Below are positions 15,036-34,286 of a stretch of 64,000 bases of DNA, in pieces (position 1 is the first letter of the stretch; each line of letters opens with the position of its first letter). The notes under the pieces are model-generated. The model was not told the DNA's origin, did no database searches, and worked only from the letters and a program-made list of their open reading frames with translations. A program made the translations under genes and the position numbers. Location: positions 310,001-374,000 of the IMG/VR virus record IMGVR_UViG_3300044796_000657, one strand, 5' to 3'.

Positions 15036-15064
15036 TTGCAAATGATTTTCAATTATGGTAGACT
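15036..15064 (+). promoter_or_regulatory. Sigma70-type promoter of pncB
   Basis: TTGCAA, a 17-nt spacer and TAGACT with an extended TG; TTATGGTAGACT is shared with the pncA promoter. Confidence 0.6.
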
Positions 15065-15088
15065 ATTTCCATCCTTCCGGAGTAGATC

Positions 15089-16285
15089 ATGGCCATTAAA
15101 AGCTTGCTGGACAACGACATCTATAAAATTTTCATGCAATATGCCGTACTCAAAGAGTTTCCGGGTACGCATGTCCGTATGGCTTTCATGAACCGTCGTA
15201 AAACCGATGTTCTCTCAAAATCGCTTTTGAAATCTTTAAGGGAAGTCGTAAATTCCGTGAAAGGCATGAAAGCCGATTCATGGGAATTGTCACACATCCA
15301 TAAACACTACCCATTCCTGCCAAATTGGTATATGGATTGGCTTAGTGAGTTTGCCCCAAATCCCGCCCACGTTAATATAACGGAAAACGGTGAAATTACC
15401 GTTGAAGGCCCGTGGGAACAAGCCATGTGGTGGGAAATTCCCATCCTCTACACAATCAGCGAATTGTTCTGCGGGGAAATCGATGCTGAAATAGGACACA
15501 TTCCTCGTAGCGAAATAGTCAAATCCACATTGACCAAAATGGAAATTCTGAAAGGTCACTACAGTCGCTATGGCGAGGCAATCGAACACGATCCTTGTCA
15601 ATACGTTCAATTCGGCTGTCGTCGTCGTCGCTCATACGATATTGAGGATGAAGTTGTTCGTACAATGAAAAAGGCCGATCATCCGAATATGCTCGGTATT
15701 AGCAACATCCACTTGGCAGCGAAATACGATATTAGGCCGGTGGGCACAATGGCTCATGAGTTCGTTATGGGTGTCAGTGCATTGAAAAGCCTGCGATATG
15801 CCAACCGTGAGGCAATGGAGACATGGCTTCGTGTTTTCAAGGGCGAATTGGATATTTTCCTGCCCGATACTTTTGGAACGAATGTGTTCCTGAAAGACTA
15901 CACTCGCCAATTTGCTCAAGCATTCAATGCGACTCGACAAGATAGCGGGTCAGCGTATGAATACGGCGAAAAACTCATTAACCATTACAAAACAGTAAAA
16001 CTTGATCCAAAAACCAAATCGATCACATTCAGTGATGGGTTAACTGCTACAGAATCAACGAACATCCAGCAACACTTCTACAATCGAATTAAAAGAGCTT
16101 ACGGCATCGGCACACACTTCACTAACGATTTCATGAACAGACCTGCCATGAATATCGTGATGAAGTTAACACATGTCAACGGAATTCCGGTCGTCAAGCT
16201 CAGCGACGTTCCCGGCAAAGCCTGTGGCGATCCCAATGCTCTCAAAGCAGCAAAGTGGGTGTTTCTCGGCGAACCTTTAGTATAA
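15089..16285 (+). CDS. pncB: Nicotinate phosphoribosyltransferase
   Basis: SLLDNDIYK, FGCRRR, GTMAHEF (phospho-His), LPDTF, RQDSG, FSDGL, GIGTHFTND and KLSDVPGK. Confidence 0.93.
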   Translation: MAIKSLLDNDIYKIFMQYAVLKEFPGTHVRMAFMNRRKTDVLSKSLLKSLREVVNSVKGMKADSWELSHIHKHYPFLPNWYMDWLSEFAPNPAHVNITENGEITVEGPWEQAMWWEIPILYTISELFCGEIDAEIGHIPRSEIVKSTLTKMEILKGHYSRYGEAIEHDPCQYVQFGCRRRRSYDIEDEVVRTMKKADHPNMLGISNIHLAAKYDIRPVGTMAHEFVMGVSALKSLRYANREAMETWLRVFKGELDIFLPDTFGTNVFLKDYTRQFAQAFNATRQDSGSAYEYGEKLINHYKTVKLDPKTKSITFSDGLTATESTNIQQHFYNRIKRAYGIGTHFTNDFMNRPAMNIVMKLTHVNGIPVVKLSDVPGKACGDPNALKAAKWVFLGEPLV

Positions 16286-16294
16286 GGATTTACG

Positions 16295-16783
16295 ATGAAG
16301 TACGTTGAATGTCCCGACTTGTTCATTCCTGAATCCATCGATGATTACAAGAAAACCTTGTTTCTCGGTGGGGGAATTTCAGGTGTGGGCAATTGGCAAG
16401 CGGAGATGGTGAGATTGTTGCAGGATACGGAGTTAATCCTCATCAATCCCCGGCGAACCAACTTCGACGTTAATAATACAAAAATGACTGTGGAACAAAT
16501 CCAGTGGGAATATCACCACTTGAATTTGTCTCATGCTCGTATGTTCTGGTTCCCACCGGAAACTCTGTGTCCGATCACCTTATTTGAATTAGGGAGATTC
16601 TCCGTACAGAGCAATCCCCTATTCGTAGGGTGTGATCCCAAATACGCACGGTCGCTTGATCTCGAAGAGCAAATGAAGCATGTCCGAAGATCGGAAGTCA
16701 TGTTTGATTTGGAGATTCTCGCACGACAGATTATTTTGTATGCGAAACATATGTCAAGCAACGGGCGATACTACGCCACTTAA
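16295..16783 (+). CDS. Nucleoside 2-deoxyribosyltransferase-like protein
   Basis: LFLGGGI, NWQ, LINPRR, QIQWE, FWFP and CPITLFELG. Confidence 0.8.
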   Translation: MKYVECPDLFIPESIDDYKKTLFLGGGISGVGNWQAEMVRLLQDTELILINPRRTNFDVNNTKMTVEQIQWEYHHLNLSHARMFWFPPETLCPITLFELGRFSVQSNPLFVGCDPKYARSLDLEEQMKHVRRSEVMFDLEILARQIILYAKHMSSNGRYYAT

Positions 16784-17121
16784 CCACTACTACTAGAAGA
16801 AGACGAACTTGATGAATGAATAACTTTGTGTGTTGGAAAATTGCTCACTCTTAACGGTACGCCCGGCAGCAATCCAATTGGTGGAGGCACGAAGTCATCA
16901 AAATCAGGATGCCGCAAATTCGGTAAAGGAATTGGAATTCGTCTCGTTCCCCACGGCCAAAGTAATGGTAAAAAATACCTCATTCCCGGTGGTGGCACCA
17001 TTGGCGGTGGTGCTTGCGGTTGTGGTTGTGGTTGCGGTTGTTCGATTGGTGGCGGTGGTGGTAATTGCATATTATTCCTTTTCTTGTGGTGTTTAACTAC
17101 TACTGCTGCTACTACTATCAC
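16780..17121 (-). CDS. Pro-rich protein with a C-terminal poly-Ser tail (paralogue 2)
   Basis: PPPPPIEQPQPQPQPQ...PTHKVIHSSSSSSSSSG; the start is probably the internal MQLPPP. Confidence 0.55.
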   Translation of the reverse strand: MIVVAAVVVKHHKKRNNMQLPPPPPIEQPQPQPQPQAPPPMVPPPGMRYFLPLLWPWGTRRIPIPLPNLRHPDFDDFVPPPIGLLPGVPLRVSNFPTHKVIHSSSSSSSSSSG

Positions 17122-17470
17122 TTGACGAAGATGATGAGTGGCTAACTACGTGAGTGGGTCTTATGGGTTCAGGTCGTAATACCATGCCGGGTGGTGTATC
17201 AAAAAATGGGAAATCTGGTAACTTAAATTTAGGCCACCACTTTGGCGGAGTTGGAATTGGCGGAATCGGTATCGGCGGTATTGGTGGGAGTGGGAACGGC
17301 CAAGATCGCCGTGGTGTCCCCGGAGGTGTCGGGGGCGTCGGCGGTGAAGGTATTCCTCTCGGTGGTTCAGGCGGCATAGTCGGCGGCAATAGCGGCATCA
17401 TTGGAGGCCCATAAGGCCCAATTGGTCCAAAAGGCGGTGGTGGTGGAAGCGGGGGTAAAGGTGGATTCAT
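17093..17470 (-). CDS. Pro-rich protein with a C-terminal poly-Ser tail (paralogue 1)
   Basis: MNPPLPPLPPPPP...PTHVVSHSSSSSSDSSSSSSS; its start abuts the upstream stop (TAATG overlap). Confidence 0.6.
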   Translation of the reverse strand: MNPPLPPLPPPPPFGPIGPYGPPMMPLLPPTMPPEPPRGIPSPPTPPTPPGTPRRSWPFPLPPIPPIPIPPIPTPPKWWPKFKLPDFPFFDTPPGMVLRPEPIRPTHVVSHSSSSSSDSSSSSSS

Positions 17471-17874
17471 TATTTTCCTTGTGGGGTTGTTTGATCTTTT
17501 TCACGTTCAAAAAATGCTGAAAGTTGAGCCAATACTTCATCTCTAGAGATGATATGAACTTTCGGCAAATCTGTTTCTCCAAAAATCATTTGAAGTTGAA
17601 CGCCTTGTCCCATTTTGTTCAGGTTAATAGCAGTAAAGTGGGCTTCTTTAAGCCATCCCGGTGAATTGTCTTCATCATCCAAGTCTTTCATCTTAGCAAA
17701 CATTACACGACTGCCTTCATCACCACCGAAAACCGAGTCTTCGAAAGTAAAGAAAAATGAAAAGTTTCCACCATCCAACATTAACTTCAATTTATTTTTT
17801 TGAATAGAATCCAATGCCGCTTCTAGCAAAACGGAAAGATTCTTTCGGCCAAAAATTTCATCCATGTTGATCAT
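17470..17874 (-). CDS. Hypothetical late protein
   Basis: CTAAATA box 4 nt upstream (17879-17885). Confidence 0.65.
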   Translation of the reverse strand: MINMDEIFGRKNLSVLLEAALDSIQKNKLKLMLDGGNFSFFFTFEDSVFGGDEGSRVMFAKMKDLDDEDNSPGWLKEAHFTAINLNKMGQGVQLQMIFGETDLPKVHIISRDEVLAQLSAFFEREKDQTTPQGK

Positions 17875-18000
17875 GCTCTATTTAGCCCCTCATGTCACAA
17901 TCATTTCAGATTGATTGTCATTCTTGTTTCGTTATAATAACACCCAGAATAATAGAATTTTGACTATCTGAAATAGGCGAAGCTTTTAATTTACGGAGTA

Positions 18001-18600
18001 TTGATGTTAAAATATATTGGTTTTGGTGGACAATATCGTTCGGGAAAAGACGCTGCTTCTGATCATTTATATGCTCGTTTGAGTGGAAAATGGAAACGTG
18101 CCTCGTTGGGTCATGCCGTCAAAAAGATTTTCGCTGAACACTTTAACGTAAGTATGGAATTTATTGAGGAATGGAAAGTCAAAGAAGAAGTGCCGCCCGG
18201 ATTCAATTGCCCTTTGCGAGATGGGTTAATTAAAATTGGGGATGGCTGGCGGGACACCAAGGCTGATATTTGGATTAGAAAATTATTCGATAACAATAAA
18301 GATAATTTGATTATCTCAGATGTTCGTTATATTAATGAAGCTGAGCATGTTCGTAATAACAATGGTATTATGAATTTGGTTTGGCGACCGGGATATGAAA
18401 ACAAAAAACCATCACGATCAGAACAAGAATTGATGCAATTTGTCAAAAGGCTTCAAAAAGAGCCAAGCGGTCGTATTGATCATGAAAAATATCCTGACGT
18501 TCCTTTTGACTTCTGGTTAGTTAATGATGGAAATTATAGGGATTGGCTGGAAAAGGTTGATAACATCGTATTGCCATATGCTCTTAAAAGGTTAAGTTAA
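18001..18600 (+). CDS. Deoxynucleoside monophosphate kinase (T4 gp1-like)
   Basis: P-loop GQYRSGKD, LGHAVK, IISDVRYINE and NDG. Confidence 0.8.
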   Translation: MMLKYIGFGGQYRSGKDAASDHLYARLSGKWKRASLGHAVKKIFAEHFNVSMEFIEEWKVKEEVPPGFNCPLRDGLIKIGDGWRDTKADIWIRKLFDNNKDNLIISDVRYINEAEHVRNNNGIMNLVWRPGYENKKPSRSEQELMQFVKRLQKEPSGRIDHEKYPDVPFDFWLVNDGNYRDWLEKVDNIVLPYALKRLS

Positions 18601-19346
18601 TGCATTTCGTTATAAGAAACAAAGATTTTATTTTCACAGAAACCGTATTGCCGGGCGATGATGTTCTTACATCCAATGGCGGTAAGGTATTTCAAGATTA
18701 CATCCAAGAAACTAAAGTTTTATGTGGGCCTTACTCTGAATGTAAATTTCCACAAAGTTACTTCGGCAACATCCGACCTTGGGATTACGAGCGGATTTTA
18801 GAATACGGGGACTTCGCTGCCAATCAAAAGGTTTTAGAATGCGGTGGGCTTCATAGCTATTTCGCTATTGCCACTTCCCAAAAAGTTAATCATTACACTT
18901 GTACTGATAGTTTTTATTGGGCGACTCGTGACTATGCTCAAAATCCACAATTACAAAGTCCTCAAGAGTGGTGTAAGTATTTGATTGGTAAAGGTCGTGG
19001 CAAACTTCACGCCGAAGAAGCCGACTTGCAATCCATGAAGTATGCCAACGAACAATTTGATAGAGTTGTCTGTATCAGTGTGATTGAGCATGTACACGAA
19101 GATCGCAAGGGTATTCTGGAAATGATGAGGGTTCTTAAGCCGGGCGGTTTATTGCTTTTGACAACTGAATACAATCCCACTTGGTCTAAGCCTTACGCTG
19201 AAACAGACGGCAGTTATTATCGTGTATATGATCAAAGTGACTTGAGTAATCTTTTGGCTGGTCTTGATGTTGAAGTAATGCAAGCCCAAGGTGGGGATGT
19301 TCGTGACGGGCAATTTACTACTACGTTCATACGGATCAGAAAATGA
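18600..19346 (+). CDS. Class I SAM-dependent methyltransferase
   Basis: VLECGG, FDRVVCISVIEH and RVLKPGGLLLLT. Confidence 0.85.
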   Translation: MHFVIRNKDFIFTETVLPGDDVLTSNGGKVFQDYIQETKVLCGPYSECKFPQSYFGNIRPWDYERILEYGDFAANQKVLECGGLHSYFAIATSQKVNHYTCTDSFYWATRDYAQNPQLQSPQEWCKYLIGKGRGKLHAEEADLQSMKYANEQFDRVVCISVIEHVHEDRKGILEMMRVLKPGGLLLLTTEYNPTWSKPYAETDGSYYRVYDQSDLSNLLAGLDVEVMQAQGGDVRDGQFTTTFIRIRK

Positions 19347-20752
19347 ATGTATCTGACATCATTAATAAGTTCAAAATTCAAAATGCCAAAACGAGACTGA
19401 GAATAGCAGTTATTGGTGATACGCTCGTTGATGAATACCGTTACGGCCAAGTCAACCGGATTTCGCCCGAATTTCCCGTTCCGATATTAACTTCCGAGTC
19501 AGACGCCAAGGAATCTTGTCCCGGTGGCGCTGCGAATGTATGCCATCAAATGACACACATGAACGCCGAAGTCTTTCTCGTAGGCTTTGTGGACAATGTC
19601 ACACGTAAATTGTACGGTCAGCAAACCTTCAATATTGACTACTGCGTTGATTTGCCAAGCGGCTTTGTACCAATCAAAGTTCGATTTTATGAAGGCGACT
19701 TTCCTCTCCTGCGATGGGATATTGAAAGTCCTAACTATGGCGAAAAAGATTTAAGTGAATTGAGACGAAAAATTCTCATTAATTTTGAATCTCTCATCAA
19801 AGAGGGATTGAGTGCGGTCATTATTAGTGATTATAATAAAGGCATCTTTGACGAAGCTACCGCTCGTTCTCTCATGCAATTATGTACTTATTACCGCATT
19901 CCTACTATCGTTGATCCCAAGAAACCACCAGTGAGCAAATGGTTCGGGGCTACAGTCATTAAGCCAAATGCGGCTGAAGCCAAGACGCTAACTGGTGAAT
20001 CTACTATTTCATCTCAATTGAGTAAATTATGTGAAAATGCTCATACGAGTATGATCACCCAAGGCGGCGACGGTGTTATTTGCCAAATTGGAAAAGAAAT
20101 TTTTGAATACATGTCCCCCGTACCACGATCTAAGGAGGTGAACAGTGTTATCGGGGCGGGGGACTGTTTTATAGCAATGTTAACTCTTGGGATGTCGCAC
20201 GGTATGACAACTCAAGAAGCTGTAGCATTGGCATTTGAAGCCGGTGCTGTTTACGTTAAAGCAAGACATAATAAACCAATTCATCTTAATGAAATACTCG
20301 CAAGAGTTGATGTTGAAGGCTCTCGTATCGTCAAAGCCGAAGAGTTAAACTTTAACAAAAACGAACGTATTGTTTTCACAAATGGTTGTTTTGACGTTAT
20401 TCATGCTGGTCACTTGGATACTTTGAAATTTGCCAAATGTCAAGGTGATCGATTGATTGTCGGTGTTAATTCGGATGCTTCTGTCAAGCGACTTAAGGGT
20501 GATAAGCGACCCATTTATGGACAAGATGAACGTGCTAGATTTTTAGCGTCAATGTATTTCGTAGATCATGTTGTGATTTTTGATGAAGATACACCAGCCG
20601 AATTGATTAATAAAATTCAGCCACACATTGTTGTTAAGGGCGGCGATTACTCTATTACGGATGTTGTTGCCGGTAATGCCAAAGTTGTTTTGTCGCCTCT
20701 CAGAAAAGGATACTCTTCAACTAATACAATTAATAAACTATCTGACGACTAA
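19343..20752 (+). CDS. hldE: Bifunctional heptose-7-phosphate kinase / heptose-1-phosphate adenylyltransferase
   Basis: PfkB half: GDTLVDEY, RISPEFPVP, GGAANV, SDYNKG and GAGD. C-terminal half: FTNGCFDVIHAGH, GVNSD, EDTP and VKGGDY. Confidence 0.93.
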   Translation: MNVSDIINKFKIQNAKTRLRIAVIGDTLVDEYRYGQVNRISPEFPVPILTSESDAKESCPGGAANVCHQMTHMNAEVFLVGFVDNVTRKLYGQQTFNIDYCVDLPSGFVPIKVRFYEGDFPLLRWDIESPNYGEKDLSELRRKILINFESLIKEGLSAVIISDYNKGIFDEATARSLMQLCTYYRIPTIVDPKKPPVSKWFGATVIKPNAAEAKTLTGESTISSQLSKLCENAHTSMITQGGDGVICQIGKEIFEYMSPVPRSKEVNSVIGAGDCFIAMLTLGMSHGMTTQEAVALAFEAGAVYVKARHNKPIHLNEILARVDVEGSRIVKAEELNFNKNERIVFTNGCFDVIHAGHLDTLKFAKCQGDRLIVGVNSDASVKRLKGDKRPIYGQDERARFLASMYFVDHVVIFDEDTPAELINKIQPHIVVKGGDYSITDVVAGNAKVVLSPLRKGYSSTNTINKLSDD

Positions 20753-20759
20753 ATAAGGT

Positions 20760-21044
20760 ATGTTCAAAAAATTCAAAGAATTCGTTTCACTAAAAGAGGC
20801 AATGGCTCCTCAAATGGGCCAACCGGGTCAAATGACTCCACAGACGCCAAATCCTGCCGCTAAAATGAACGTTCAAAACACTTTGAAGCAGGCGATGAAT
20901 GTGCCGCCTCCGACTGGTATCAATCAATCAATATATAAGAACAAGTTGATGGCAGCTATGAAAATGTCTCAAACGAGCAATGTTCAAACACCTCAACAAG
21001 CGATAGATTTAGTTAATATTCAGCAGCGGGCGGCTCAGGCGTAA
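20760..21044 (+). CDS. Gln/Pro/Met-rich small protein with a capsid-targeting-like N-terminus
   Basis: N-terminus MFKKFKEFVSLKE; CTAAATA at 20749-20755. Confidence 0.65.
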   Translation: MFKKFKEFVSLKEAMAPQMGQPGQMTPQTPNPAAKMNVQNTLKQAMNVPPPTGINQSIYKNKLMAAMKMSQTSNVQTPQQAIDLVNIQQRAAQA

Positions 21045-22059: not shown

Positions 22060-22500
22060 TTAACTACCACTATCGCTACTACTGTCCATATTCATATCAA
22101 ATGGCGGCGAATAAAAGTTCAACAATACCGTACCAGTCTTTGAAAGGTTGGTGAGTTGATGGATCGCCTCACCATCCAATCCTGAAATATCACCCTTGCG
22201 AAGATAATGCTGGTGATAGAATGACAACTCGCCCGGATCTTCTTCTTTATAAAGCGTTTCCAGCAACTTGCCATTAACTACACGGATCACACAATTGCTA
22301 CCTTGGTGATTGTGTACCGAACTTGTTTGGCCTTCTCGGAAGCAAATCAAAACGATTTCCATGTCGTCGTCACGAGAGATAGAAACTCTCGTATAAGGTT
22401 CGTCGCCGAAACTTACCGGCAAGTTCTTTAACTTGAATTGGTAATTATAGGCAAAATTGGTCAGGGCTGATAGGTCGTAACTCATGTTATTAAATAGCAA
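22060..22500 (-). CDS. Cysteine dioxygenase-like cupin
   Basis: YTRV, SSVHNHQGSNC, IHQL and FYSPPF; the start is probably 22485. Confidence 0.8.
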   Translation of the reverse strand: MLFNNMSYDLSALTNFAYNYQFKLKNLPVSFGDEPYTRVSISRDDDMEIVLICFREGQTSSVHNHQGSNCVIRVVNGKLLETLYKEEDPGELSFYHQHYLRKGDISGLDGEAIHQLTNLSKTGTVLLNFYSPPFDMNMDSSSDSGS

Positions 22501-24165
22501 TTACCAACCAAATTCCTGTAAAAGTTTATGATGTGGTCTTTGTGTGTCGAACATCATTCTTGGCAACAAGTCAACATCTGGATCTAGATTGGCCAACAAA
22601 TCGCCCGTTTCAATACCAGCTTCCAATTCTTTCCACAATGCCTTAACGTCGTCACCCGAAAAACTCTTGTGAATGATATTAGCATCAGGCGTAGCACCGA
22701 TTGGCATTTCCCGGTTCAAAACGTCAGAGATGTACAATGCTATACTGAGGCAAATCACCAAGTCGTCATGCTTGTTCTTTTGTGCTTCGGCTCTTTGCTT
22801 TTCTTGATTGTAAATGAATGTTAACAATTCCCGAATAATACGAACGCTTCGAATCTTGACAAGACGATTCAACATACACGTTTGTAATGCTTCCATACAA
22901 ACTGGACGCAATACTTTATTCATGTTAACGCCGGGACGATCTCTAGTTGCCCCTTGCGTAAAGTAAAGGTTGTCATAACTCAATGAGTGTTCAAGTCGTT
23001 CACAAACAGCTTGGCCCGGTCCCATTGAGTTTTCCACAATAATCAAAGCATTGTTATAAAGTTTTCCCACATGCGCCAAAACTTGACTGAACTTATATGT
23101 CGGAATTGTCTTGGAATAAAATTCAGCCACTTGCGTTAACGTGGAAATGTCCATGACAATAAAGGCGCAGTTATCGCCTTCTTGTCCAACACCCATAGCG
23201 GCATCGGCAGTAATGAGATATTCACGACCGGATTTAGGCATTTCCCAAACCCACATCGCACCGGGTTCGTATTTTGCATTCGGAAGTTCGTCTTCTTTGA
23301 AGCTTTCTTCGGGGATGATGTCCCATTCACCCATCATCTTTTTAATTGGATTAGAGCATTGTTTTTCAAATTCTTTGATAACTTCACCGGGAATGTAAGT
23401 ATCACCGGAGCCGAGGAATGAACCTTCGTATTCCTGTGCGAAGCCTTTTTCGCCGATGTTAGCTCGTGTTCGCTTTTCCCATTCGGCATTGTTATAGTCG
23501 GGGTGTTCATGCCAGTCAATATGTACAACAAAAAACTGACTTCTCTTGTCAATAGCCTTTTGGTATTGTTCGTAGTACCAACCACCGACGCCACCGATAC
23601 CGTTAACCGTGGAGATGATAATAGCATTACCACCGGTTGAGAGCGTAGGATACATGCTCTTCCAGTGTTCTTCCATACCTTGAACGAACGCCGCTTCATC
23701 GATAATTAGATAAGTTAAAGCACGGGAACGAGCAGCGGCAGGAGTATAGAACCACATAACCGAACGAGTTTCAGCAAACTCTTTTTCGTGGTCGTTATCG
23801 TTGTTCATTTCCGGACGAAGCCATTCCGGAAGTTCATTCTTGGCATTAGCTACCGTTTTACCTACAGCTTTAGCTTCACGGTCAGTTTTAGAAGCAATGA
23901 GAATACGCTGATCGGTGTAGAAAATGCACTTCCATAACATCCACATAGATGTTACAGTGGTCAGACCGGCTTGACGGAATTTCTTAACAATGCTAAACTG
24001 ATTAGATTCAAAGTCAGAGATAACTCGATTTTGGAAGTCGTATAGAACGAATGGTACCAAACCCTTTTTCGGGTGGGTAATCTGTAAGTACTTCTCAGAA
24101 AAGTACTTGAAACTATTTCGACATCTGATAAACTCTCTAAGTTGCTCGTCATTTAATTGGCCCAT
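22501..24165 (-). CDS. terL: Terminase large subunit (T4 gp17-like)
   Basis: Walker A region KFRQAGLTT, Walker B IIDEAAF, ISTVNG, QEYEGSF, nuclease motif ITAD and HDDLV. Confidence 0.95.
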   Translation of the reverse strand: MGQLNDEQLREFIRCRNSFKYFSEKYLQITHPKKGLVPFVLYDFQNRVISDFESNQFSIVKKFRQAGLTTVTSMWMLWKCIFYTDQRILIASKTDREAKAVGKTVANAKNELPEWLRPEMNNDNDHEKEFAETRSVMWFYTPAAARSRALTYLIIDEAAFVQGMEEHWKSMYPTLSTGGNAIIISTVNGIGGVGGWYYEQYQKAIDKRSQFFVVHIDWHEHPDYNNAEWEKRTRANIGEKGFAQEYEGSFLGSGDTYIPGEVIKEFEKQCSNPIKKMMGEWDIIPEESFKEDELPNAKYEPGAMWVWEMPKSGREYLITADAAMGVGQEGDNCAFIVMDISTLTQVAEFYSKTIPTYKFSQVLAHVGKLYNNALIIVENSMGPGQAVCERLEHSLSYDNLYFTQGATRDRPGVNMNKVLRPVCMEALQTCMLNRLVKIRSVRIIRELLTFIYNQEKQRAEAQKNKHDDLVICLSIALYISDVLNREMPIGATPDANIIHKSFSGDDVKALWKELEAGIETGDLLANLDPDVDLLPRMMFDTQRPHHKLLQEFGW

Positions 24166-27420: not shown

Positions 27421-27445
27421 TATGGTCTAACTACATAAAGTAGTT

Positions 27446-28161: not shown

Positions 28162-28163
28162 GT

Positions 28164-28193
28164 AAAAAAGCCACTCAGATGAGTGGCTTTTTT
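28164..28193. terminator. Bidirectional terminator
   Basis: A6-GCCACTC-AGAT-GAGTGGC-T6. Confidence 0.8.
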
Positions 28194-28195
28194 GT

Positions 28196-28444: not shown

Positions 28445-28457
28445 ATTGTATACTTAT

Positions 28458-29282
28458 TTATGGAGGCGTTACTAAATCACCACTCGTCATAACGTAAGGG
28501 ATTTCTGTAATTTGGTCAGGTTTAGTATTAGCACCACTATAAACATAATCTATCTGACGGGCCAAATCACCAACTCTGGCACCAGCAGCGTATTCAATAA
28601 TTGTCGTAATGCGGTCGCTACCATCTACAGTAATTTTCTGGAAGTTAAAGATACCAGACCGGCCACGCAACAGCTCCCAATCGGCTTGCTCATTCGTATA
28701 ATTCAAACCGGCATCCGCAATAATAGCCTGATCAATAGCTTGTGAGACATCGAGCTTTTGAAGAACACCCAAGGAGTCTGGGAATGATGTAATGCTGCTG
28801 ATTGTGTGTCTGTCAAAGTACAAAGGCATTTCAGCAACGCCAGCCTTTTTGTTAAATCTCAACTTGCTTTCAGCACCGCTATTTGAGATGTAAACCTTGA
28901 ATTGGGTTCTCTGTCTTAGAGACTTAACGATAACATAATTAACACCGTGGTTATCGGTATTGACACTAGCCGCAAACAAAGCTTTGAAAGTGCTATTGGC
29001 ATTCAAAGCAGTAACTACTTCAGTAGCAGACACAGCAGAGGAACTTACGGCACCAGCGGCAATATTAACAGCTAATTGTGCGTAGCTTTTGCCGACATCA
29101 AATGAATAATTGAATGTTAATGTATTTACAACTGATAAATCGAATGGTTCTGGATTGAACGCCATCATCAATTGCGAAGAATTGATATTGGAGTTAACTA
29201 CAAACGTCATATTGTATTGCTTATCAGACAGCAATAAGTTACCACGAAACTCGGTGTCAAATACGTTTTGGTAAAACGGCAT
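28458..29282 (-). CDS. Probable virion structural protein
   Basis: Ala/Ser/Asn/Val-rich and beta-rich; the start is probably MPFYQNVF at 29282. Confidence 0.55.
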   Translation of the reverse strand: MPFYQNVFDTEFRGNLLLSDKQYNMTFVVNSNINSSQLMMAFNPEPFDLSVVNTLTFNYSFDVGKSYAQLAVNIAAGAVSSSAVSATEVVTALNANSTFKALFAASVNTDNHGVNYVIVKSLRQRTQFKVYISNSGAESKLRFNKKAGVAEMPLYFDRHTISSITSFPDSLGVLQKLDVSQAIDQAIIADAGLNYTNEQADWELLRGRSGIFNFQKITVDGSDRITTIIEYAAGARVGDLARQIDYVYSGANTKPDQITEIPYVMTSGDLVTPP

Positions 29283-29283
29283 A

Positions 29284-29793
29284 TTAATATCCCCACAAGG
29301 CTTTAAATCGTTGCACAATCCCCTGTGCTTTTTTACGCTCATCCACTTTTCTCTCTTCTTTTTCTTCAAGAGATTTTCTGGCTTCTACTGGTCGAGCATA
29401 ACCGTAAAGCCTGTCAACTGCATCTTCCCATTCAGTACCGGGAACGTACGACCTCAACTCACCTTCAATTTCCATATAAGTTCTATAACCCTGATAATGG
29501 ACAATCAATTCCGCTGGTCGGCTATCATAAAACATCAATTTGATACACAAATTGATTCCTCGTCTTAGCCCATCGAAGTAATAACCTTTAAGGTAGACTT
29601 CGCCATCCCCGTCATCCAAAATGTCGGGCGTATCCATTTCCCAGAAATCGGGCAGCATTGAATATTGAACGGTTTGTTCGACTACCGGTCTGCCAAAAGC
29701 CTTTACGATTACGTGAAGTTTACTGGTCAATTCTTTTCGGGCCGCTTCAATCGTCCGTTTTTCAACGAGCGCTTTGATCCTCTCTTCAATCAT
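29284..29793 (-). CDS. Hypothetical protein
   Basis: 169-aa ORF. Confidence 0.6.
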   Translation of the reverse strand: MIEERIKALVEKRTIEAARKELTSKLHVIVKAFGRPVVEQTVQYSMLPDFWEMDTPDILDDGDGEVYLKGYYFDGLRRGINLCIKLMFYDSRPAELIVHYQGYRTYMEIEGELRSYVPGTEWEDAVDRLYGYARPVEARKSLEEKEERKVDERKKAQGIVQRFKALWGY

Positions 29794-29912
29794 GTCACTT
29801 TATATAGTATTTTTTCAAGAAAGTGATATTCAATGTACTTACTTAATTTTTCATTTATTTCATTGCTACTTCATATATATTGCCCACTATCGAAAGGGGG
29901 GGGTATATATAT

Positions 29913-31331
29913 ATGAAAATATGGAATTCATTAAAGGCGTTTTTTGTTACCCCAATAGTAAAGGCTTTTAGTGGTTTAATACATTACCAAGCTAACGATC
30001 CAACGAGGCCAGAGCTTGCGGTAGTGATGGAATTGCCACAGCCGCCAACCCCTTGCCCGCCATTCGTGGTTGAAGGATTTACGGGCAAAGATGGACCGGA
30101 TGGATCAATTGAGCGGCAAGCTTGTGGCGTTTACACCACAATGACTTTGTCGCTAATCCAATGCCAAAACATTCTTACTAAGCCGATTATTCGTTGGCCA
30201 GCCCTTTGCCAGCTTTTTGCCAATCCACGTTCTGGCAAAATGTTCAATGCTTATTACGACCGATACTATCTCAACTTCTTTTACGATTTAGACCCAAAAA
30301 CCAATCAGACGGTTTATACGTGTGAATCGACAGATGTTGTTGCCCACGAACTCGGACATGCCATTCTTGACGCTCTCCGACCCGACTTGTGGGCCGTTCA
30401 AAGTGTTGAAATCCAATCTTTCCATGAAGCTTTTGGCGACATTAATGCGATGTTAACGGAACTTACAATGAAGGAAATGGTTGCTGACGTTTTGAAAGAA
30501 ACGAATGGTGATTTGAGAAAGAGTAATGTTGTTGCCCGTATCGGCGAACAAATGGGACTTGCTATCTACCATGCTAAGGGTAATGATGGTATGCCGGATA
30601 ATTTTGCTTTGAGAACCGCTATCAATAACTTCCAATACGTTGCCCCTGAAACATTGCCAACACGTGCGCCGGATGATACTTTGGCTGGTGAACCACACAG
30701 TTTCAGCCGAGTTTTCGCAGGCGGATTCTACGATGCATTGGTCAATGTTTACGATAAAGAAGTTGCAAGTGGAAAACTTCCTGTTGATGCCTTAGAGCAA
30801 GCTAGATTGAAAATGTCTAAAATCATTTACAACAGTATCCGTACTGCTCCCGTGACGACACGATTCTTCGGGTCAGTTTTGAAGGCAATGTTAACTTATG
30901 ATTTCCAAATGGGATTAGAGTGTGGTGAAGCAATTAGAACTGGTTTCGCAGGACACGGCATTTATGCTCCGGAAGATTTGAATGTCAATATGGTGGCTAT
31001 TGATTTGACGGCACAAGATTCGTTGTTTATGCTTGGCCAAAACCAAGTTGAAACGGCCAGAACGGTTGATTTTGACTTTGACAAGAGCGATCCTCTTTAT
31101 TCTTGTATTATTGAATTGGCAAATGCTCATCAACCACGCCAGTTTGTTACTGACAATTTAGAAGATTTACAAAAAGCCATTGGTGCTGCCAAACACTCAT
31201 TAATGGTAATTCGTGATCATGATCGTGTTGCCTCCGGACCAACTGCCGGAAGGGTTCACGAAAAGGAATTTTCCGTTATTGATGGCCGTTTAGTGCGTAA
31301 TTACTTCAGTTGCTGGTTTCATCAACATTAG
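29913..31331 (+). CDS. Thermolysin-like (M4/M36) zinc metallopeptidase
   Basis: FNAYY, DVVAHELGH (HExxH), SFHEAFGDI (third ligand) and EPHSFS. Confidence 0.8.
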   Translation: MKIWNSLKAFFVTPIVKAFSGLIHYQANDPTRPELAVVMELPQPPTPCPPFVVEGFTGKDGPDGSIERQACGVYTTMTLSLIQCQNILTKPIIRWPALCQLFANPRSGKMFNAYYDRYYLNFFYDLDPKTNQTVYTCESTDVVAHELGHAILDALRPDLWAVQSVEIQSFHEAFGDINAMLTELTMKEMVADVLKETNGDLRKSNVVARIGEQMGLAIYHAKGNDGMPDNFALRTAINNFQYVAPETLPTRAPDDTLAGEPHSFSRVFAGGFYDALVNVYDKEVASGKLPVDALEQARLKMSKIIYNSIRTAPVTTRFFGSVLKAMLTYDFQMGLECGEAIRTGFAGHGIYAPEDLNVNMVAIDLTAQDSLFMLGQNQVETARTVDFDFDKSDPLYSCIIELANAHQPRQFVTDNLEDLQKAIGAAKHSLMVIRDHDRVASGPTAGRVHEKEFSVIDGRLVRNYFSCWFHQH

Positions 31332-32122
31332 GTATAATGGTCGTATCCATGAGGGGTACGGCAATGAACGTGGCAACAGAATACGTTATGCGAAACAACG
31401 TAGCAGCTAAAATGCTCAAGCTGCCTTGTTCGTTGTTTTTAGAAAGTTTAAGCAAACGCAAAAAGAAAATGACGAAATCTGCTCTGGTTCTGGAAACAGA
31501 CGGTGCGGATTTCGTCACCGTGACGAGATACGACTTAACTCAACAAAAATCCAAATCGGTACCCGAACCTTCATACAAAACGCAAGTTAACCGGGCTGAC
31601 ATTTTCACAAGTCCGTTTATCGTAATTCCCAACATGTTCCTCATGCCTTTCCACGAAACGCCTTATACGTTCGATGGCAAGCAAGAACAATCGATACCTT
31701 TGAGTGTTATTCAAGAAAAAGAATACACGAAAACCGTGGATGGGTTCTTCCAATCCATGAACAATAAAACCGCCCGTGAAACTTGGCTTTGGCGGGTTTT
31801 TGAAAAAATTAACATTTCCCCCGAAACCCGAACTCTTTATGCTGAGTCTGGGTTTGCGGAAGCAACCGCATTGTCTCGCTTTGATGCTGCTCTACACCAG
31901 ATTTGGGTACAGTGGAAAAGCACTTTGCTGGATTTTTCTGGTCCCGCATCAGAATTGATTTTCAACAAAGTCTATAAAGGAAAGATTAACGCTTATCCAG
32001 AAAGACTGGTACGATCAGGCATGGATGAATTTATGCCTGTCATGCGTCCTAGCCGACAGAGAGAGAGAATCATTTTCCCCCCATTGGGTATGCGGCCACC
32101 TAGTAGAACCATTCGTGAATAA
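31310..32122 (+). CDS. Hypothetical protein
   Basis: 270-aa ORF. Confidence 0.5.
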   Translation: MLVSSTLGIMVVSMRGTAMNVATEYVMRNNVAAKMLKLPCSLFLESLSKRKKKMTKSALVLETDGADFVTVTRYDLTQQKSKSVPEPSYKTQVNRADIFTSPFIVIPNMFLMPFHETPYTFDGKQEQSIPLSVIQEKEYTKTVDGFFQSMNNKTARETWLWRVFEKINISPETRTLYAESGFAEATALSRFDAALHQIWVQWKSTLLDFSGPASELIFNKVYKGKINAYPERLVRSGMDEFMPVMRPSRQRERIIFPPLGMRPPSRTIRE

Positions 32123-32150
32123 TGATTTTTGTATTAAGAATCTACATACT

Positions 32151-32954
32151 ATGATGGAAAGACGCAAATTCGATAATTGGGTTAAATCTCGCCAAAATAT
32201 AGTAGGCGAAGGCTTCATGGATCGTATATTCGGCAGAAAGCAACAGCCGCAATCGCACGAACCACCTGAACCGGAAGAACCGTCACATATTTATGCGCAC
32301 CCAACGGTTGAAAAATATCACCGTGAAGTCCTAGATCATCTTCTTTTGAATCAGCCACTCGAAATCATTAATGGTTCTGGTCAAAAGACCGGCGATTATC
32401 ATGGTAAACTCCCGCCGGAAATTGACAAGGCTCTCCGAAGATTTGTGGCAAGTCACACTTTGGGCGGCGAAAAGTCATTCCTCAGAGTTAACCAGCACGA
32501 CGCAATTTTGATCCTCAACTATATGGATCGATTGCGGGTGCCGGGCGAAGACTCACCACTCACCGACCGCTTTGGCATTACAAATCCTGTTTCATTCAGT
32601 CAATGGATGGAAACCCACGTTCCAGTATCCTTGAACGTACAAAGACAAATGGGCTTTGCACAAGCATCCGGTAACTATGTGCCGCCACGTGATAATGTCG
32701 GAGCGGGTTCTTTACGTGATCCAAGAATCAAGAAACTTGTTGACGCTTCGTTGAAAGTAATTAACGGTGTCAGCGGCAAGATGGAAACATCAAGCCGTAG
32801 AATTACAAAAGACATTATTGATGGTGTCAAAGAAATGCGTGGGGCACTAGCTGCCATGAACATTATTGATGATGCTCAACCGACCACCAACACCCCTCCT
32901 CCTGATCCTTACGTCGTTGGCAAGGGCCGTCCAAAACCCAAACAAAAGCCTTGA
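32151..32954 (+). CDS. Hypothetical late protein, possible internal head protein
   Basis: CTACATA at 32142-32148 just before ATG; N-terminus MMERRKFDNWVKS. Confidence 0.6.
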   Translation: MMERRKFDNWVKSRQNIVGEGFMDRIFGRKQQPQSHEPPEPEEPSHIYAHPTVEKYHREVLDHLLLNQPLEIINGSGQKTGDYHGKLPPEIDKALRRFVASHTLGGEKSFLRVNQHDAILILNYMDRLRVPGEDSPLTDRFGITNPVSFSQWMETHVPVSLNVQRQMGFAQASGNYVPPRDNVGAGSLRDPRIKKLVDASLKVINGVSGKMETSSRRITKDIIDGVKEMRGALAAMNIIDDAQPTTNTPPPDPYVVGKGRPKPKQKP

Positions 32955-32978
32955 CATTTAGGTAATTTATGGTAGACT
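32951..32978 (+). promoter_or_regulatory. Sigma70-type promoter of pncA
   Basis: TTGACA, a 16-nt spacer and TAGACT with an extended TG; contains TTATGGTAGACT. Confidence 0.65.
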
Positions 32979-32996
32979 TAATATAAGGAGTCTACC

Positions 32997-33602
32997 ATGA
33001 ATACCGATGCCTTATTTGTTGTCGATCCTCAAAACGGTTTTTCAAAATTGTGTCCAAAAGAGTTGCCCGTAGAAGGGGCTTTGGACATCATTGCTCCGAT
33101 TAACGAACTCCTTGAATTACCTTTTGCCCGCAAAGACATGTCATTGGATTGGCACCCTGCCGATCACGACTCTTTCAAAATATATCCGCCTCATTGCGTC
33201 ATGGACACCTTCGGCGCATCGCCTCTTAGTGGGTTGAATACCCACAAGATTCATGTCATTTGGCGTAAGGGCTACGACAAAACCGGGATGGCATACAGTG
33301 CCGTCGATCAACACCCGTATCTGCCTCATATGTTCATTCATCAAGGTATCAAAAGAATTTTCTTTTGCGGCATTTGTACCAACATCTGTGTGATTGATAC
33401 AGCATTAGGAATGATCCTTAATTGTCCGATGTATAAGGATGTCGGACGACCTTTTTACGAAGTCTACATTGTAGAAGATGCTTCGGCGGGCATTGATATT
33501 CCCGCATTGGACATTGATCAAAAAGCCGCCAAAGCCAAAGGCATTGCCAATGGCATCAAATACATTACCGTGGCCGAAGTCAAGAAGATGGTTAAGGAGT
33601 AG
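32997..33602 (+). CDS. pncA: Nicotinamidase (isochorismatase fold)
   Basis: VVDPQNGF, DWHP, PPHC, RKG, YSA and GICTNICV (catalytic Cys). Confidence 0.9.
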   Translation: MNTDALFVVDPQNGFSKLCPKELPVEGALDIIAPINELLELPFARKDMSLDWHPADHDSFKIYPPHCVMDTFGASPLSGLNTHKIHVIWRKGYDKTGMAYSAVDQHPYLPHMFIHQGIKRIFFCGICTNICVIDTALGMILNCPMYKDVGRPFYEVYIVEDASAGIDIPALDIDQKAAKAKGIANGIKYITVAEVKKMVKE

Positions 33603-33604
33603 TC

Positions 33605-33790
33605 ATGGCTAAAAAGACTCAAACCAAACAAGAGCAAATTTCGCAAGAAGAGCAGTATATCGCATTCCTTCAAAAGCGATTAGCTTCTGAGCATTACAAG
33701 GAAGTTACTTCAAAGGAAGACTACGCCAAGGAAAAGGCAAAGTATGAAAAGGCAAAGTTCAAATTGAAGATGTTGAAGGAACAGCGTTAA
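33605..33790 (+). CDS. Small basic hypothetical protein
   Basis: 61-aa ORF directly downstream of pncA. Confidence 0.6.
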   Translation: MAKKTQTKQEQISQEEQYIAFLQKRLASEHYKEVTSKEDYAKEKAKYEKAKFKLKMLKEQR

Positions 33791-34286
33791 TAGAACCTAC
33801 GATGTTTTCGATAATCTGCCGGGATTTCTGAAACAGTGAAATCAAACCCGAATGAAATTTCTTTGAAGATATTAACATCATCTTTTGAATTTCTTCATAA
33901 GCCAACCAGTCAATATGGGAAGTTTCCCAACTATGTCCGGAATGGGGACTGAAAGTGAATTCTGTTGGCACAACACCAATGAAATTGAAATACTTGAAGT
34001 TTCCAGAACTGAAAACATAAGCGGGAGTTAACTGGATTGCCCCTTCGTAACCCGTCTCTTCTTTCATTTCTTCTTTGGCACTTTCGGCGGGTTGCATTCC
34101 TCTTTGGATTGCGCCTCCAAGAGTGCCGTAGCAATTACCCATATGAACCGATCCGGAACGCCACGCAAGACAAATCCGTTTCGTACTTGAACATATCGGA
34201 AGAATGCCGCTGGCCCCACCACCTTCACCAGCCCAAAAACCGTCGTTATCGTAGTGAGATTCTATCCACATCTTAAATCTCTTCAT
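33759..34286 (-). CDS. NUDIX hydrolase with a capsid-targeting-like N-terminus
   Basis: NUDIX box GGAIQRGMQPAESAKEEMKEETGY; N-terminus MKRFKMWIES. Confidence 0.8.
   Translation of the reverse strand: MKRFKMWIESHYDNDGFWAGEGGGASGILPICSSTKRICLAWRSGSVHMGNCYGTLGGAIQRGMQPAESAKEEMKEETGYEGAIQLTPAYVFSSGNFKYFNFIGVVPTEFTFSPHSGHSWETSHIDWLAYEEIQKMMLISSKKFHSGLISLFQKSRQIIENIVGSINAVPSTSSI

What the first reader, a model, noticed from the sequence alone, without database searches (positions are those of the whole stretch)
15036..34286. PncA plus PncB NAD salvage route with a shared promoter element: a candidate third type of phage NAD-reconstitution pathway
Seen in sequence: intact pncB (15089-16285) followed by an NDT-like gene, and 18 kb away intact pncA (32997-33602) near a NUDIX gene. 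Both enzymes are preceded by sigma70-type promoters containing the identical 12-mer TTATGGTAGACT (15053-15064 and 32967-32978), which points to co-regulation. Established: NAD-cleaving defences (SIR2 and TIR effectors such as Thoeris and DSR) release nicotinamide and ADPR, and the described phage countermeasures NARP1 (Adps plus Namat) and NARP2 (Nampt plus NMN adenylyltransferase) use the amidated route. PncA followed by PncB is the deamidated Preiss-Handler route (nicotinamide to nicotinate to NaMN), finished by NadD and NadE, which are not in this window. Inference: an early-expressed deamidating rescue pathway. NUDIX and the NDT-like protein may recycle ADPR or NMN to ribose-5-phosphate or destroy signals.
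Basis: partly seen in the sequence, partly recalled or inferred. Interest (0 to 1): 0.8.

Follow-up and report, generated by a model that had tools for sequence, protein, structure and literature searches.

The report
Jumbo-phage nicotinamide salvage genes, twin promoters
A 430-614 kb phage carries working-looking copies of the two enzymes that turn nicotinamide into an NAD precursor, 18 kb apart but behind matching promoter cores; such gene sets are already known and common in giant phages, and their suspected role against NAD-destroying bacterial defences is still untested.

Summary
pncB (15089-16285), an NDT-like gene (16295-16783), pncA (32997-33602) and a NUDIX gene (33759-34286, minus strand) are intact, and TTATGGTAGACT sits upstream of both pncB and pncA.

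PncB passes curated NCBIfam cut-offs. PncA keeps every catalytic and metal-binding residue of nicotinamidases.

A repeated 12-mer is not unusual in itself. In its promoter register (TTGNNA, 16-17 nt spacer, TG-extended -10) it occurs exactly twice in the 430-kb IMG/VR contig, at these two genes.

Its first 8 nt also precede one unrelated gene (12010-12378). There and at pncA the promoter forms the 5' arm of a hairpin that buries the start codon, as in T4 genes e, soc, 49 and I-TevI.

The "third type" claim is outdated. NARP3 is PnuC plus NadR, and Preiss-Handler genes in jumbo phages were described in 2024. In IMG/VR, 41 of 79 PncB-bearing viral loci have a pncA-like gene within 10 kb.

This phage also encodes a glutamine-dependent NadE about 76 kb beyond pncA. 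No NadD was found.

NUDIX and the NDT-like protein have no demonstrable NAD link. The anti-defence role remains inference.

The parts
15036..15064 (+). pncB promoter-like site: TTGCAA (15036-15041), 17-nt spacer, TG-extended -10 TAGACT (15059-15064). The 12-mer is 15053-15064.
   Evidence: Sequence read. 12-mer hits. One of only two sites of the composite pattern in the 430-kb contig. The upstream gene is divergent, and no start-codon hairpin forms (z -0.14).
15089..16285 (+). pncB, nicotinate phosphoribosyltransferase, 398 aa
   Evidence: Passes TIGR01514 and NF003704 cut-offs. Pfam NAPRTase_N plus NAPRTase. Best solved relative is 1yir, with the GTMAHE histidine segment conserved. 42% and 39% identical to PncB of the related phages L007 and L008.
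16295..16783 (+). Nucleoside 2-deoxyribosyltransferase-like gene (PF15891), 162 aa, 9 nt after pncB and probably co-transcribed. Substrate unknown.
   Evidence: Pfam hit. Only solved relative is 4mcj, of unknown function. The family is mostly viral and often fused to metallophosphatase, NUDIX or DHH domains. Found within 10 kb of pncB in only 3 of 79 other viral loci.
32951..32978 (+). pncA promoter-like site: TTGACA (32951-32956, overlapping the stop codon of the upstream gene), 16-nt spacer, TG-extended -10 TAGACT (32973-32978). The 12-mer is 32967-32978.
   Evidence: (10 of 12 matches, TG present).
32965..33002 (+). Inverted repeat: arms 32965-32978 and 32989-33002, 14 nt, 93% complementary, 10 nt apart. 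The 5' arm is the promoter -10 region. The 3' arm covers the end of the Shine-Dalgarno sequence and the ATG.
   Evidence: repeat I9. RNA fold of -24.1 kcal/mol, z -5.95. Strongest start-codon-pairing structure among the gene starts folded in the window.
32997..33602 (+). pncA, nicotinamidase, 201 aa
   Evidence: Isochorismatase fold. Best solved relatives are nicotinamidases 3r2j, 1ilw and 2wt9. D10, K91, C131 and D51, H53, H57, H66 are invariant in an alignment with bacterial and phage homologues. Closest named homologues are Planctomycetota, 45-52% identical.
33605..33790 (+). Small lysine/glutamate-rich ORF (61 aa), 2 nt after the pncA stop and probably co-transcribed. No assignment.
33759..34286 (-). 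NUDIX hydrolase gene, 175 aa, convergent with pncA. Substrate unknown and link to NAD unproven.
   Evidence: Pfam hit. The Nudix box reads G-x5-M-x7-E-E-M-K-E-E-T-G-Y: the glutamates are kept, the usual arginine is not (read by eye). Not an orthologue of the NUDIX in the NAD clusters of L007 and L008. Only generic matches elsewhere.
11942..12378 (+). Third member of the promoter class: TTGATT (11942-11947), 16-nt spacer, TATCTT, with TTATGGTA at 11958-11965. A hairpin (about 11959-11976 with 12006-12023) buries the ATG of an orphan 122-aa gene (12010-12378).
   Evidence: (-25.1 kcal/mol, z -5.4). The protein has no relatives of known function.

Best explanation
The window comes from a T4-like jumbo phage. 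The IMG/VR piece is 430 kb and the parent scaffold is 614 kb.

The phage carries the salvage-specific half of the Preiss-Handler route:
- PncA deamidates nicotinamide to nicotinate.
- PncB converts nicotinate plus PRPP, with ATP, to NaMN.
- A phage glutamine-dependent NadE, about 76 kb beyond pncA and outside the window, performs the last step, NaAD to NAD.
- No phage NadD was found, so the NaMN to NaAD step probably falls to the host's essential NadD.

The module most likely keeps NAD available in the infected cell by recycling nicotinamide released by NAD-consuming enzymes, whether the phage's own, the host's housekeeping enzymes or defence NADases.

pncA and pncB are not an operon here. Each has its own sigma-70-type promoter with an identical TG-extended -10 core, so they are probably switched on together.

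pncA lies behind a same-strand gene. It is additionally locked by a hairpin in which the promoter's -10 region pairs with its own start codon. Read-through transcripts should therefore be poorly translated, and only transcripts started at the pncA promoter should make protein.

Shown here: gene identities, conserved residues, promoter and hairpin sequences, genome-wide uniqueness of the composite motif, presence of NadE, and frequency of pncA-pncB pairing in viral contigs.

Inferred: enzyme activity, promoter use and timing, hairpin function, dependence on host NadD, and the physiological purpose.
For: Enzyme identity:
- PncB passes curated equivalog and subfamily cut-offs and keeps the GTMAHE histidine segment.
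- PncA has the full nicotinamidase triad and metal site.

Phage context:
- TerL, Gp23-like capsid protein and other phage genes are present.
- The nearest GenBank phage by TerL is the 595-kb LR756511.

Pathway context:
- Related phages carry pncB-NUDIX-nadE-nadD clusters next to a conserved Band_7 pair.
- LR756501 has pncB, nadE, pnuC, nadR and pncA on one strand.
- Of 79 IMG/VR loci with PncB, 41 have a PncA-like gene, 49 have NadE and 14 have NadD within 10 kb.
- NadE lies on the same contig: 53% identical to a relative's NadE, with CN_hydrolase plus NAD_synthase domains.
- Our PncA is at most about 35% identical to other viral PncAs (best IMG/VR locus 31%), but 45-57% identical to planctomycete-type ones. 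It was therefore acquired separately, yet carries pncB's promoter core, which argues for selected co-expression.

Regulation:
- The composite promoter pattern occurs only at these two genes in 430 kb.
- The T4 precedent is PMC3014915.

Literature: jumbo phages with Preiss-Handler genes are described in PMC11662467.
Against: - There are no expression or activity data.
- NadD was not found. A profile of the phage-lineage NadD matched 68 proteins, none on the 614-kb scaffold, and none is in the about 79 kb read directly. Most of the genome could not be read.
- PncA scores far below the NCBIfam nicotinamidase equivalog cut-off, 48.7 against 174.
- The pncB promoter is a weak consensus match (8 of 12), and promoter-like sites are not enriched in the region.
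- The first 8 nt of the 12-mer also precede an unrelated gene, so part of the similarity reflects a promoter class.
- pncA, pncB and nadE are 18 to 94 kb apart, unlike the tight clusters in other phages.
- The 184 kb of the parent scaffold outside the IMG/VR piece was not scanned for the motif.
Confidence: 0.62

Rival explanations
1. Dedicated counter-defence. The PncA-PncB(-NadE) set is a deamidating NAD-reconstitution pathway whose main selected function is to rebuild NAD from the nicotinamide released by SIR2, TIR or SEFIR defence NADases. It would work like NARP1 to NARP3 but feed into the NadD step.
For: - NARP1, 2 and 3 show that phages do counter NAD depletion by resynthesis (10.1101/2024.02.11.579819; PMC13464706).
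- PncA uses exactly the base that NADases release.
- The module is frequent in viral contigs.
- pncA was acquired separately and wired to the same promoter core as pncB.
- Neither NARP paper searched for these terms mentions PncA or PncB, so the idea is open rather than excluded.
Against: - No experiment exists.
- The route needs four steps, PRPP, ATP at the PncB, NadD and NadE steps, and glutamine, and it does not reuse ADPR.
- No NadD was found.
- No defence or anti-defence genes were recognised beside either gene.
- The host is unknown.
- The same genes are equally explained as general NAD supply, as proposed for NAD-jumbo phages (PMC11662467).
Confidence: 0.3
2. Nicotinamide removal rather than NAD rebuilding. 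PncA mainly lowers nicotinamide, a product inhibitor of sirtuins, ADP-ribosyltransferases and NADases, to keep the phage's own NAD-consuming enzymes active. PncB merely disposes of the nicotinate.
For: - Established knowledge that nicotinamidase controls sirtuin activity through nicotinamide levels (yeast Pnc1). This is recalled from memory and was not tested here.
- NAD-jumbo phages are reported to carry many NAD-consuming enzymes (PMC11662467).
Against: - No ADP-ribosyltransferase, sirtuin or macro-domain gene was detected in the window.
- The frequent linkage of pncA with pncB and nadE points to flux towards NAD.
- Removing nicotinamide would also relieve inhibition of host defence NADases.
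Confidence: 0.08
3. Two unlinked cargo genes. pncA and pncB were picked up independently and act, if at all, separately. The shared 12-mer reflects a common promoter class plus chance.
For: - The genes are 18 kb apart with about 28 genes between them, including TerL.
- A shared 12-mer among upstream regions is not rare.
- TTATGGTA also precedes an unrelated gene.
- PncA and PncB have different nearest relatives.
Against: - The composite promoter pattern is found only at these two genes in 430 kb, against about 4e-4 expected.
- Both enzymes are consecutive steps of one pathway.
- The pairing recurs in about half of PncB-bearing viral loci.
- The phage also has NadE.
Confidence: 0.1

Closest known systems
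Preiss-Handler gene sets of 'NAD-jumbo phages' (PMC11662467), and the pncA/pncB/nadE clusters seen here in IMG/VR and in LR756501
   Same: A genome over 200 kb with phage-encoded pncB and nadE, and pncA in many. PncB here is 39-42% identical to that of related phages, which share the Band_7 pair at 54-60%. LR756501 has pncB, nadE, pnuC, nadR and pncA together. 41 of 79 viral loci pair pncA with pncB.
   Different: Here the genes are scattered: pncB, pncA 18 kb away, and nadE about 76 kb further. No nadD was found. pncA is of planctomycete type rather than the usual viral type. pncA and pncB are joined by matching promoters instead of operon structure.
NARP2 (Nampt plus Nmnat), NARP1 (Adps plus Namat) and NARP3 (PnuC plus NadR)
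   Same: Phage-encoded routes that raise NAD. NARP1 and NARP2 also start from nicotinamide.
   Different: None of their defining enzymes is in the window. This route is deamidated (nicotinate, NaMN, NaAD) and needs NadD and NadE. No anti-defence test exists for it.
Bacterial salvage pathway I, such as the Pseudomonas aeruginosa pncA-pncB1-nadE operon under NrtR (PMC7318152, PMC2330246)
   Same: The same three enzyme families carrying out the same chemistry.
   Different: The genes are phage-borne and dispersed. The inverted repeat at pncA does not fit the NrtR core (GT-N7-AC in a 21-bp palindrome) or the NadR operator (TGTTTA-N6-TAAACA) quoted in PMC2330246.
T4 genes e, soc, 49 and I-TevI: translation-initiation regions sequestered in a hairpin whose 5' strand holds the proximal promoter (PMC3014915)
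   Same: At pncA and at gene 12010 the start codon is paired in a strong hairpin, and the 5' arm coincides with the proximal promoter's -10 region. Both genes follow a same-strand gene. The phage is T4-like in TerL, Gp23 and gp13 relatives.
   Different: The T4 examples use late promoters (TATAAATA, no -35 element). Here the promoters look sigma-70-like with TTG at -35, and no TATAAATA sites precede genes. The function has not been tested.

Membership tests
PncB (nicotinate phosphoribosyltransferase, TIGR01514 / NF003704) | Score above the curated whole-protein cut-off | tested here: met
   371.9 against 269.55, and 385.9 against 379.
PncB (nicotinate phosphoribosyltransferase, TIGR01514 / NF003704) | NAPRTase_N plus catalytic domain, with the conserved histidine segment (GTxAHE) | tested here: met
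   Pfam domains cover residues 7-124 and 170-392. GTMAHE aligns with 1yir and H223 is invariant in alignment A6. That this is the phosphorylated histidine rests on memory.
PncB (nicotinate phosphoribosyltransferase, TIGR01514 / NF003704) | ATP-stimulated conversion of nicotinate plus PRPP to NaMN | not testable with these tools
   Needs an enzyme assay.
PncA nicotinamidase (isochorismatase-like hydrolase) | Catalytic triad Asp-Lys-Cys | tested here: met
   D10, K91 and C131 are invariant in alignment A5. They align with the triad segments of 1ilw and 3r2j.
PncA nicotinamidase (isochorismatase-like hydrolase) | Metal site (Asp plus three His, the DWHPxxH ... PPHC motifs) | tested here: met
   D51, H53, H57 and H66 are invariant.
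PncA nicotinamidase (isochorismatase-like hydrolase) | Score above the NCBIfam equivalog cut-off (NF008623) | tested here: not met
   48.7 against 174. I take this model to be built on enterobacterial PncA. The Pfam Isochorismatase cut-off is passed, 38.3 against 27.
NARP1 | Adps (PRPP-synthetase-like) plus Namat (NAMPT-like) | tested here: not met
   No such families among the window's proteins. The only phosphoribosyltransferase is of PncB type.
NARP2 | Nampt plus NMN adenylyltransferase | tested here: not met
   Neither is in the window. The only cytidylyltransferase-like domain belongs to an HldE-like protein. The rest of the genome was not read.
NARP3 | PnuC transporter plus NadR-like kinase/adenylyltransferase | tested here: not met
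   No NMN_transporter or AAA_28 hits in the window. Both are present in LR756501.
NAD-jumbo phage with a complete Preiss-Handler pathway (PMC11662467) | Phage genome over 200 kb | tested here: met
   The IMG/VR contig is 430,229 bp and the parent scaffold is 614,480 bp.
NAD-jumbo phage with a complete Preiss-Handler pathway (PMC11662467) | pncB, nadD and nadE all phage-encoded | tested here: inconclusive
   pncB is present and nadE is present. nadD was not found: the profile search gave no hit on the scaffold and none is in the about 79 kb read. Most of the genome is unread.
T4-type promoter-in-hairpin translational control | Shine-Dalgarno sequence and/or AUG paired in a stable helix | tested here: met
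   pncA: -24.1 kcal/mol, z -5.95. Gene 12010: -25.1 kcal/mol, z -5.4. These are the two strongest among the gene starts folded.
T4-type promoter-in-hairpin translational control | The proximal promoter lies in the 5' strand, so its transcripts lack that strand | tested here: inconclusive
   The -10 consensus element coincides with the 5' arm. Transcript starts have not been mapped.
Nucleoside 2-deoxyribosyltransferase-like (PF15891) | Score above the Pfam cut-off | tested here: met
   57.7 against 30. Substrate and any NAD link were not tested.
NUDIX hydrolase (PF00293) | Pfam cut-off passed and an intact Nudix box | tested here: inconclusive
   The cut-off is passed, 31.2 against 21.1. The box keeps the E-x2-E-E glutamates but has Glu where Arg is usual and Met where the first Glu is usual (read by eye).

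The most novel reading that the evidence does not exclude
PncA-PncB(-NadE) is a fourth, deamidating phage NAD-reconstitution pathway. It defeats NADase defences by feeding released nicotinamide into the near-universal bacterial NadD step. It is widespread in giant phages. In this phage a separately acquired pncA has been wired to pncB as a two-gene regulon, through identical promoter cores and a T4-like translational lock.
Probability: 0.3. Interest if true: 0.65.

Novelty: new member of a known kind. Interest (0 to 1): 0.4.

Why it matters
Phage-encoded NAD resynthesis is an active topic, and three pathways (NARP1 to NARP3) have been proven experimentally. None of them uses the deamidated route.

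This window shows a clean, minimal example of that route. The IMG/VR survey made here shows that pncA-pncB(-nadE) sets are frequent in viral contigs, so a direct anti-defence test would bear on many phages.

The twin promoters and the start-codon hairpin offer a small, testable case of how a giant phage co-ordinates genes that are not in one operon.

For this particular locus, however, the gene content is of a kind already described.

Tried and rejected
- **Host NAD regulator operator.** I asked whether the pncA inverted repeat could be an NrtR or NadR operator. The quoted cores (GT-N7-AC in a 21-bp palindrome; TGTTTA-N6-TAAACA) do not fit ATGGTAGACT-N10-AGTCTACCAT. Rejected.
- **HldE-like protein (19343-20752) as the missing adenylyltransferase.** It matches HldE domain models, not NadD. 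The window also holds two GT9 heptosyltransferase-family genes and an epimerase. It is read as ADP-heptose synthesis. Rejected.
- **NUDIX as an orthologue of the NUDIX in relatives' NAD clusters.** No similarity to those. There is only 24% identity to a different NUDIX in L008. Rejected.
- **pncA and NUDIX captured together from a planctomycete-like host.** A pncA/NUDIX pair is seen in one bacterial contig. The NUDIX of another such contig is unrelated to ours. Not supported.
- **T4 late promoter TATAAATA.** There are two sites in the window and neither precedes a gene.
- **Motif conservation in relatives.** The only copies of the pncB upstream region available are identical ones (L004, L006). 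L002, L007 and L008 are too distant and lack the motif.
- **NadD searches.**
  - The IMG/VR pattern scan found nothing.
  - The profile search gave no hit on the parent scaffold.
  - About 7 kb of left flank and 8 kb of right flank hold no NAD genes.
- **First genome-wide 12-mer scan (TTG only).** The stricter scan ran to completion.
- **One flank look-up failed** because the called start differs from the ORF start I gave.
- **No near DNA match** in GenBank phages.
- **No papers mention PF15891**.

Full report
**Source and setting**

The window is positions 310,001-374,000 of IMGVR_UViG_3300044796_000657, which is 430,229 bp. That contig is itself part of a 614,480-bp JGI scaffold. A near-identical 72-kb contig exists in another sample.

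It is phage DNA:
- a T4-type large terminase lies at 22501-24165 on the minus strand;
- a Gp23-family protein, DNA methyltransferases, a dNMP kinase and many orphan genes are present.

There is no near DNA match in GenBank phages. The nearest terminase, at 41.6% identity, is in the 595-kb uncultured phage LR756511.

**Checking the observation**

All four genes are intact at the stated coordinates.

- **PncB** (15089-16285) passes the curated cut-offs of NCBIfam TIGR01514 and NF003704. It aligns end to end with solved nicotinate phosphoribosyltransferases, including the GTMAHE histidine segment.
- **The pncA product** (32997-33602) is only a modest Pfam Isochorismatase match and falls below the NCBIfam nicotinamidase equivalog cut-off. 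However:
  - its best solved relatives are nicotinamidases;
  - the triad D10/K91/C131 and the metal ligands D51/H53/H57/H66 are invariant in an alignment with bacterial and phage homologues;
  - I therefore accept it as a nicotinamidase on residues, not on HMM score.
- **The gene after pncB** is a PF15891 nucleoside-2-deoxyribosyltransferase-like protein.
- **The gene convergent with pncA** is a generic NUDIX hydrolase.

**The 12-mer**

TTATGGTAGACT occurs exactly at 15053-15064 and 32967-32978.

It decomposes into a TRTGn extended -10 element plus the hexamer TAGACT. TTGCAA lies 17 nt upstream of the hexamer at pncB and TTGACA lies 16 nt upstream at pncA. A Shine-Dalgarno sequence sits 6 nt before each ATG.

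A repeated 12-mer alone means little:
- the window has 420 such pairs;
- shuffled sets of the 39 upstream regions share 12 nt or more in 30% of trials;
- another pair of upstream regions shares 13 nt.

The register is what counts. A complete scan of IMG/VR for the 12-mer with TTGNNA at the right spacing gave 97 stretches in the whole collection. Exactly two are in this contig, the pncA and pncB sites. I calculate about 4e-4 expected for 430 kb.

Two caveats apply:
- the 184 kb of the parent scaffold outside the IMG/VR piece was not searched.

**A promoter class and a hairpin lock**

The first 7-8 nt of the element are shared more widely.
- TTATGGT occurs 12 times in the window. Four of these sites are intergenic and lie 20-34 nt before a plus-strand start codon, although only 5.7% of the window is intergenic.
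- TTATGGTA with TTG at the -35 position precedes pncB, pncA and an orphan 122-aa gene at 12010-12378.

At pncA and at gene 12010 the promoter's -10 region is the 5' arm of a long inverted repeat whose 3' arm covers the start codon:
- pncA arms are 32965-32978 and 32989-33002, giving -24.1 kcal/mol and z -5.95;
- gene 12010 gives -25.1 kcal/mol and z -5.4.

These are the two strongest start-codon-pairing structures among the gene starts I folded.

Both genes follow a same-strand gene without a terminator. pncB has a divergent upstream neighbour and no such structure.

This is the design described for T4 genes e, soc, 49 and I-TevI. There, read-through transcripts are not translated, and transcripts from the promoter inside the 5' strand are translated (PMC3014915).

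I infer that pncA is insulated so that its own promoter sets its timing. That makes the shared promoter core with pncB more meaningful. It also weakens the unsupported word 'early', because the T4 precedents are late promoters. No TATAAATA-type late promoters precede genes here.

**Pathway context**

Within the window there is no nadD, nadE, nadM, nadR, nampt, pnuC or prs. None lies in about 7 kb to the left or 8 kb to the right.

Related phages:
- L007 shares the Band_7 pair at 58-60% identity and PncB at 42%.
- L007 and L008 carry pncB, NUDIX, nadE and a nadD-like gene in one cluster.

Using NadE of these relatives as a profile, I found a 663-aa glutamine-dependent NadE on our own contig:
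- it has CN_hydrolase plus NAD_synthase domains and is 53% identical to a relative's NadE;
- it lies at about contig position 418,979-420,970, roughly 76 kb beyond pncA;
- it sits in an operon after a class I tRNA-synthetase-like gene and RtcB;
- it has no copy of the 12-mer.

A profile of the phage-lineage NadD matched 68 proteins in the large protein collection, none on the 614-kb scaffold. NadD is therefore probably supplied by the host, though a divergent adenylyltransferase elsewhere in the genome cannot be excluded.

**How common is this?**

- PncB relatives are encoded in 308 IMG/VR stretches.
- Among the 79 best loci other than ours, the following lie within 10 kb of pncB: a PncA-like gene in 41, NadE in 49, the phage-type NadD in 14, NadR in 4, PnuC in 3 and an NDT-like gene in 3.
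- Contiguous nadE-pncA-pncB arrangements are frequent, for example in L161 and L165.
- The published 735-kb phage LR756501 has pncB, nadE, a TonB-dependent receptor, pnuC, nadR and pncA on one strand.
- In GenBank phages PncB is rarer, at 13 records.

Our PncA is at most about 35% identical to other viral PncA-like genes (best IMG/VR locus 31%). It is 45-57% identical to proteins of Gemmataceae and other Planctomycetota and their metagenomic kin, which lie in bacterial contexts.

pncA was therefore acquired separately from the lineage's pncB and then came to carry the same promoter core. I read that as evidence for selected co-expression.

**Literature**

- NARP1 and NARP2 were defined in 10.1101/2024.02.11.579819.
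- NARP3 is PnuC plus NadR (PMC13464706), so 'third type' is no longer available.
- Neither paper mentions PncA or PncB.
- 'NAD-jumbo phages' with salvage or Preiss-Handler pathways, including a pncB-nadD-nadE cluster and a passing mention of phage pncA, were described in PMC11662467.
- I found no experimental test of a PncA/PncB route as counter-defence.

**The accessory genes**

- **NDT-like protein.** It belongs to a large, mostly viral family that is often fused to metallophosphatase, NUDIX or DHH domains. Its only solved relative has unknown function. It lies near pncB in only 3 of 79 other loci, and never directly adjacent in those.
- **NUDIX protein.** It has a divergent box. It is unrelated to the NUDIX of relatives' NAD clusters and has only generic relatives.

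Their proposed roles in ADPR or NMN recycling are possible but have no support here.

**Verdict**

The sequence observation is right and the enzymes are real. The matched promoters are a real, specific feature, with an added T4-like translational lock.

The locus is a dispersed member of an already described and common kind: Preiss-Handler NAD salvage genes of giant phages. It is not a new type. Whether such sets act as counter-defence is open and easily testable.

Noticed in passing
window 11942-12378: An orphan 122-aa gene shares the TTGnnn / TTATGGTA promoter type and has a start-codon-sequestering hairpin as strong as the one at pncA. The protein has no recognisable relatives.
   Followed up: partly
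window 19343-20752 (+), and about 52250-58654: A glycan-synthesis set. It comprises an HldE-like heptose kinase/adenylyltransferase, which scores below the curated cut-offs, and a GT9 heptosyltransferase-family gene at 55841-56746. It also includes GT1/GT4 glycosyltransferases at 52991-55866, an NAD-dependent epimerase at 57770-58654 and a sulfotransferase at 52250-52975. A pyruvyl transferase lies somewhere in 45786-63920. This suggests phage-directed heptose-containing glycan modification.
   Followed up: partly
window 45786-46787 (-): A full-length match to Pfam Volactin, an actin-like family: E 1e-56, 193 bits against a cut-off of 35. This is an actin-like protein in a giant phage.
   Followed up: no
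window 3953-7207 (+): A tandem pair of large SPFH/Band_7 proteins (536 and 530 aa). The pair is conserved at 54-60% identity in related phages, next to their NAD clusters.
   Followed up: partly
window 8303-9472 (-), 22060-22500 (-), and unlocated genes within 24213-45819: Unusual metabolic cargo. A sulfatase lies at 8303-9472 and a cysteine-dioxygenase-like gene lies next to TerL at 22060-22500. Within 24213-45819 there are a SAM decarboxylase, a ferritin-like protein and an Mpo1-like dioxygenase. The sulfatase and sulfotransferase content, together with PncA's nearest relatives, hint at a planctomycete-like host. This is a weak inference.
   Followed up: no
parent scaffold jgi:3300044796 Ga0480561_0000004: The JGI scaffold is 614,480 bp, but IMG/VR holds only 430,229 bp of it, offset by 239 bp. 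Either the phage is larger than the IMG/VR record or the scaffold continues into other DNA.
   Followed up: no
L308 191-3558 (IMG/VR contig about 414,175-417,542): Upstream of the phage nadE, in the same operon, lie a 630-aa class I aminoacyl-tRNA-synthetase-like gene and an RtcB RNA ligase.
   Followed up: no
window upstream of 17470-17874 (-) and of 35041-35289 (-): Two unrelated upstream regions share the 13-mer GAAACAAGAATGA. This may be chance or another regulatory element.
   Followed up: no
L127 (LR756501 418000-436000), ORF 8478-10634 (-): A TonB-dependent receptor gene sits inside the NAD cluster of the 735-kb phage, between nadE and pnuC. This is an outer-membrane uptake component in a phage NAD gene set.
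   Followed up: no
window 12919-13581 (-), and unlocated genes within 1-45819: A TnsA-like endonuclease gene lies 1.5 kb upstream of pncB, and also next to pncB in the 58%-identical relative P0122. HNH and LAGLIDADG endonuclease domains are found elsewhere in the window.
   Followed up: no
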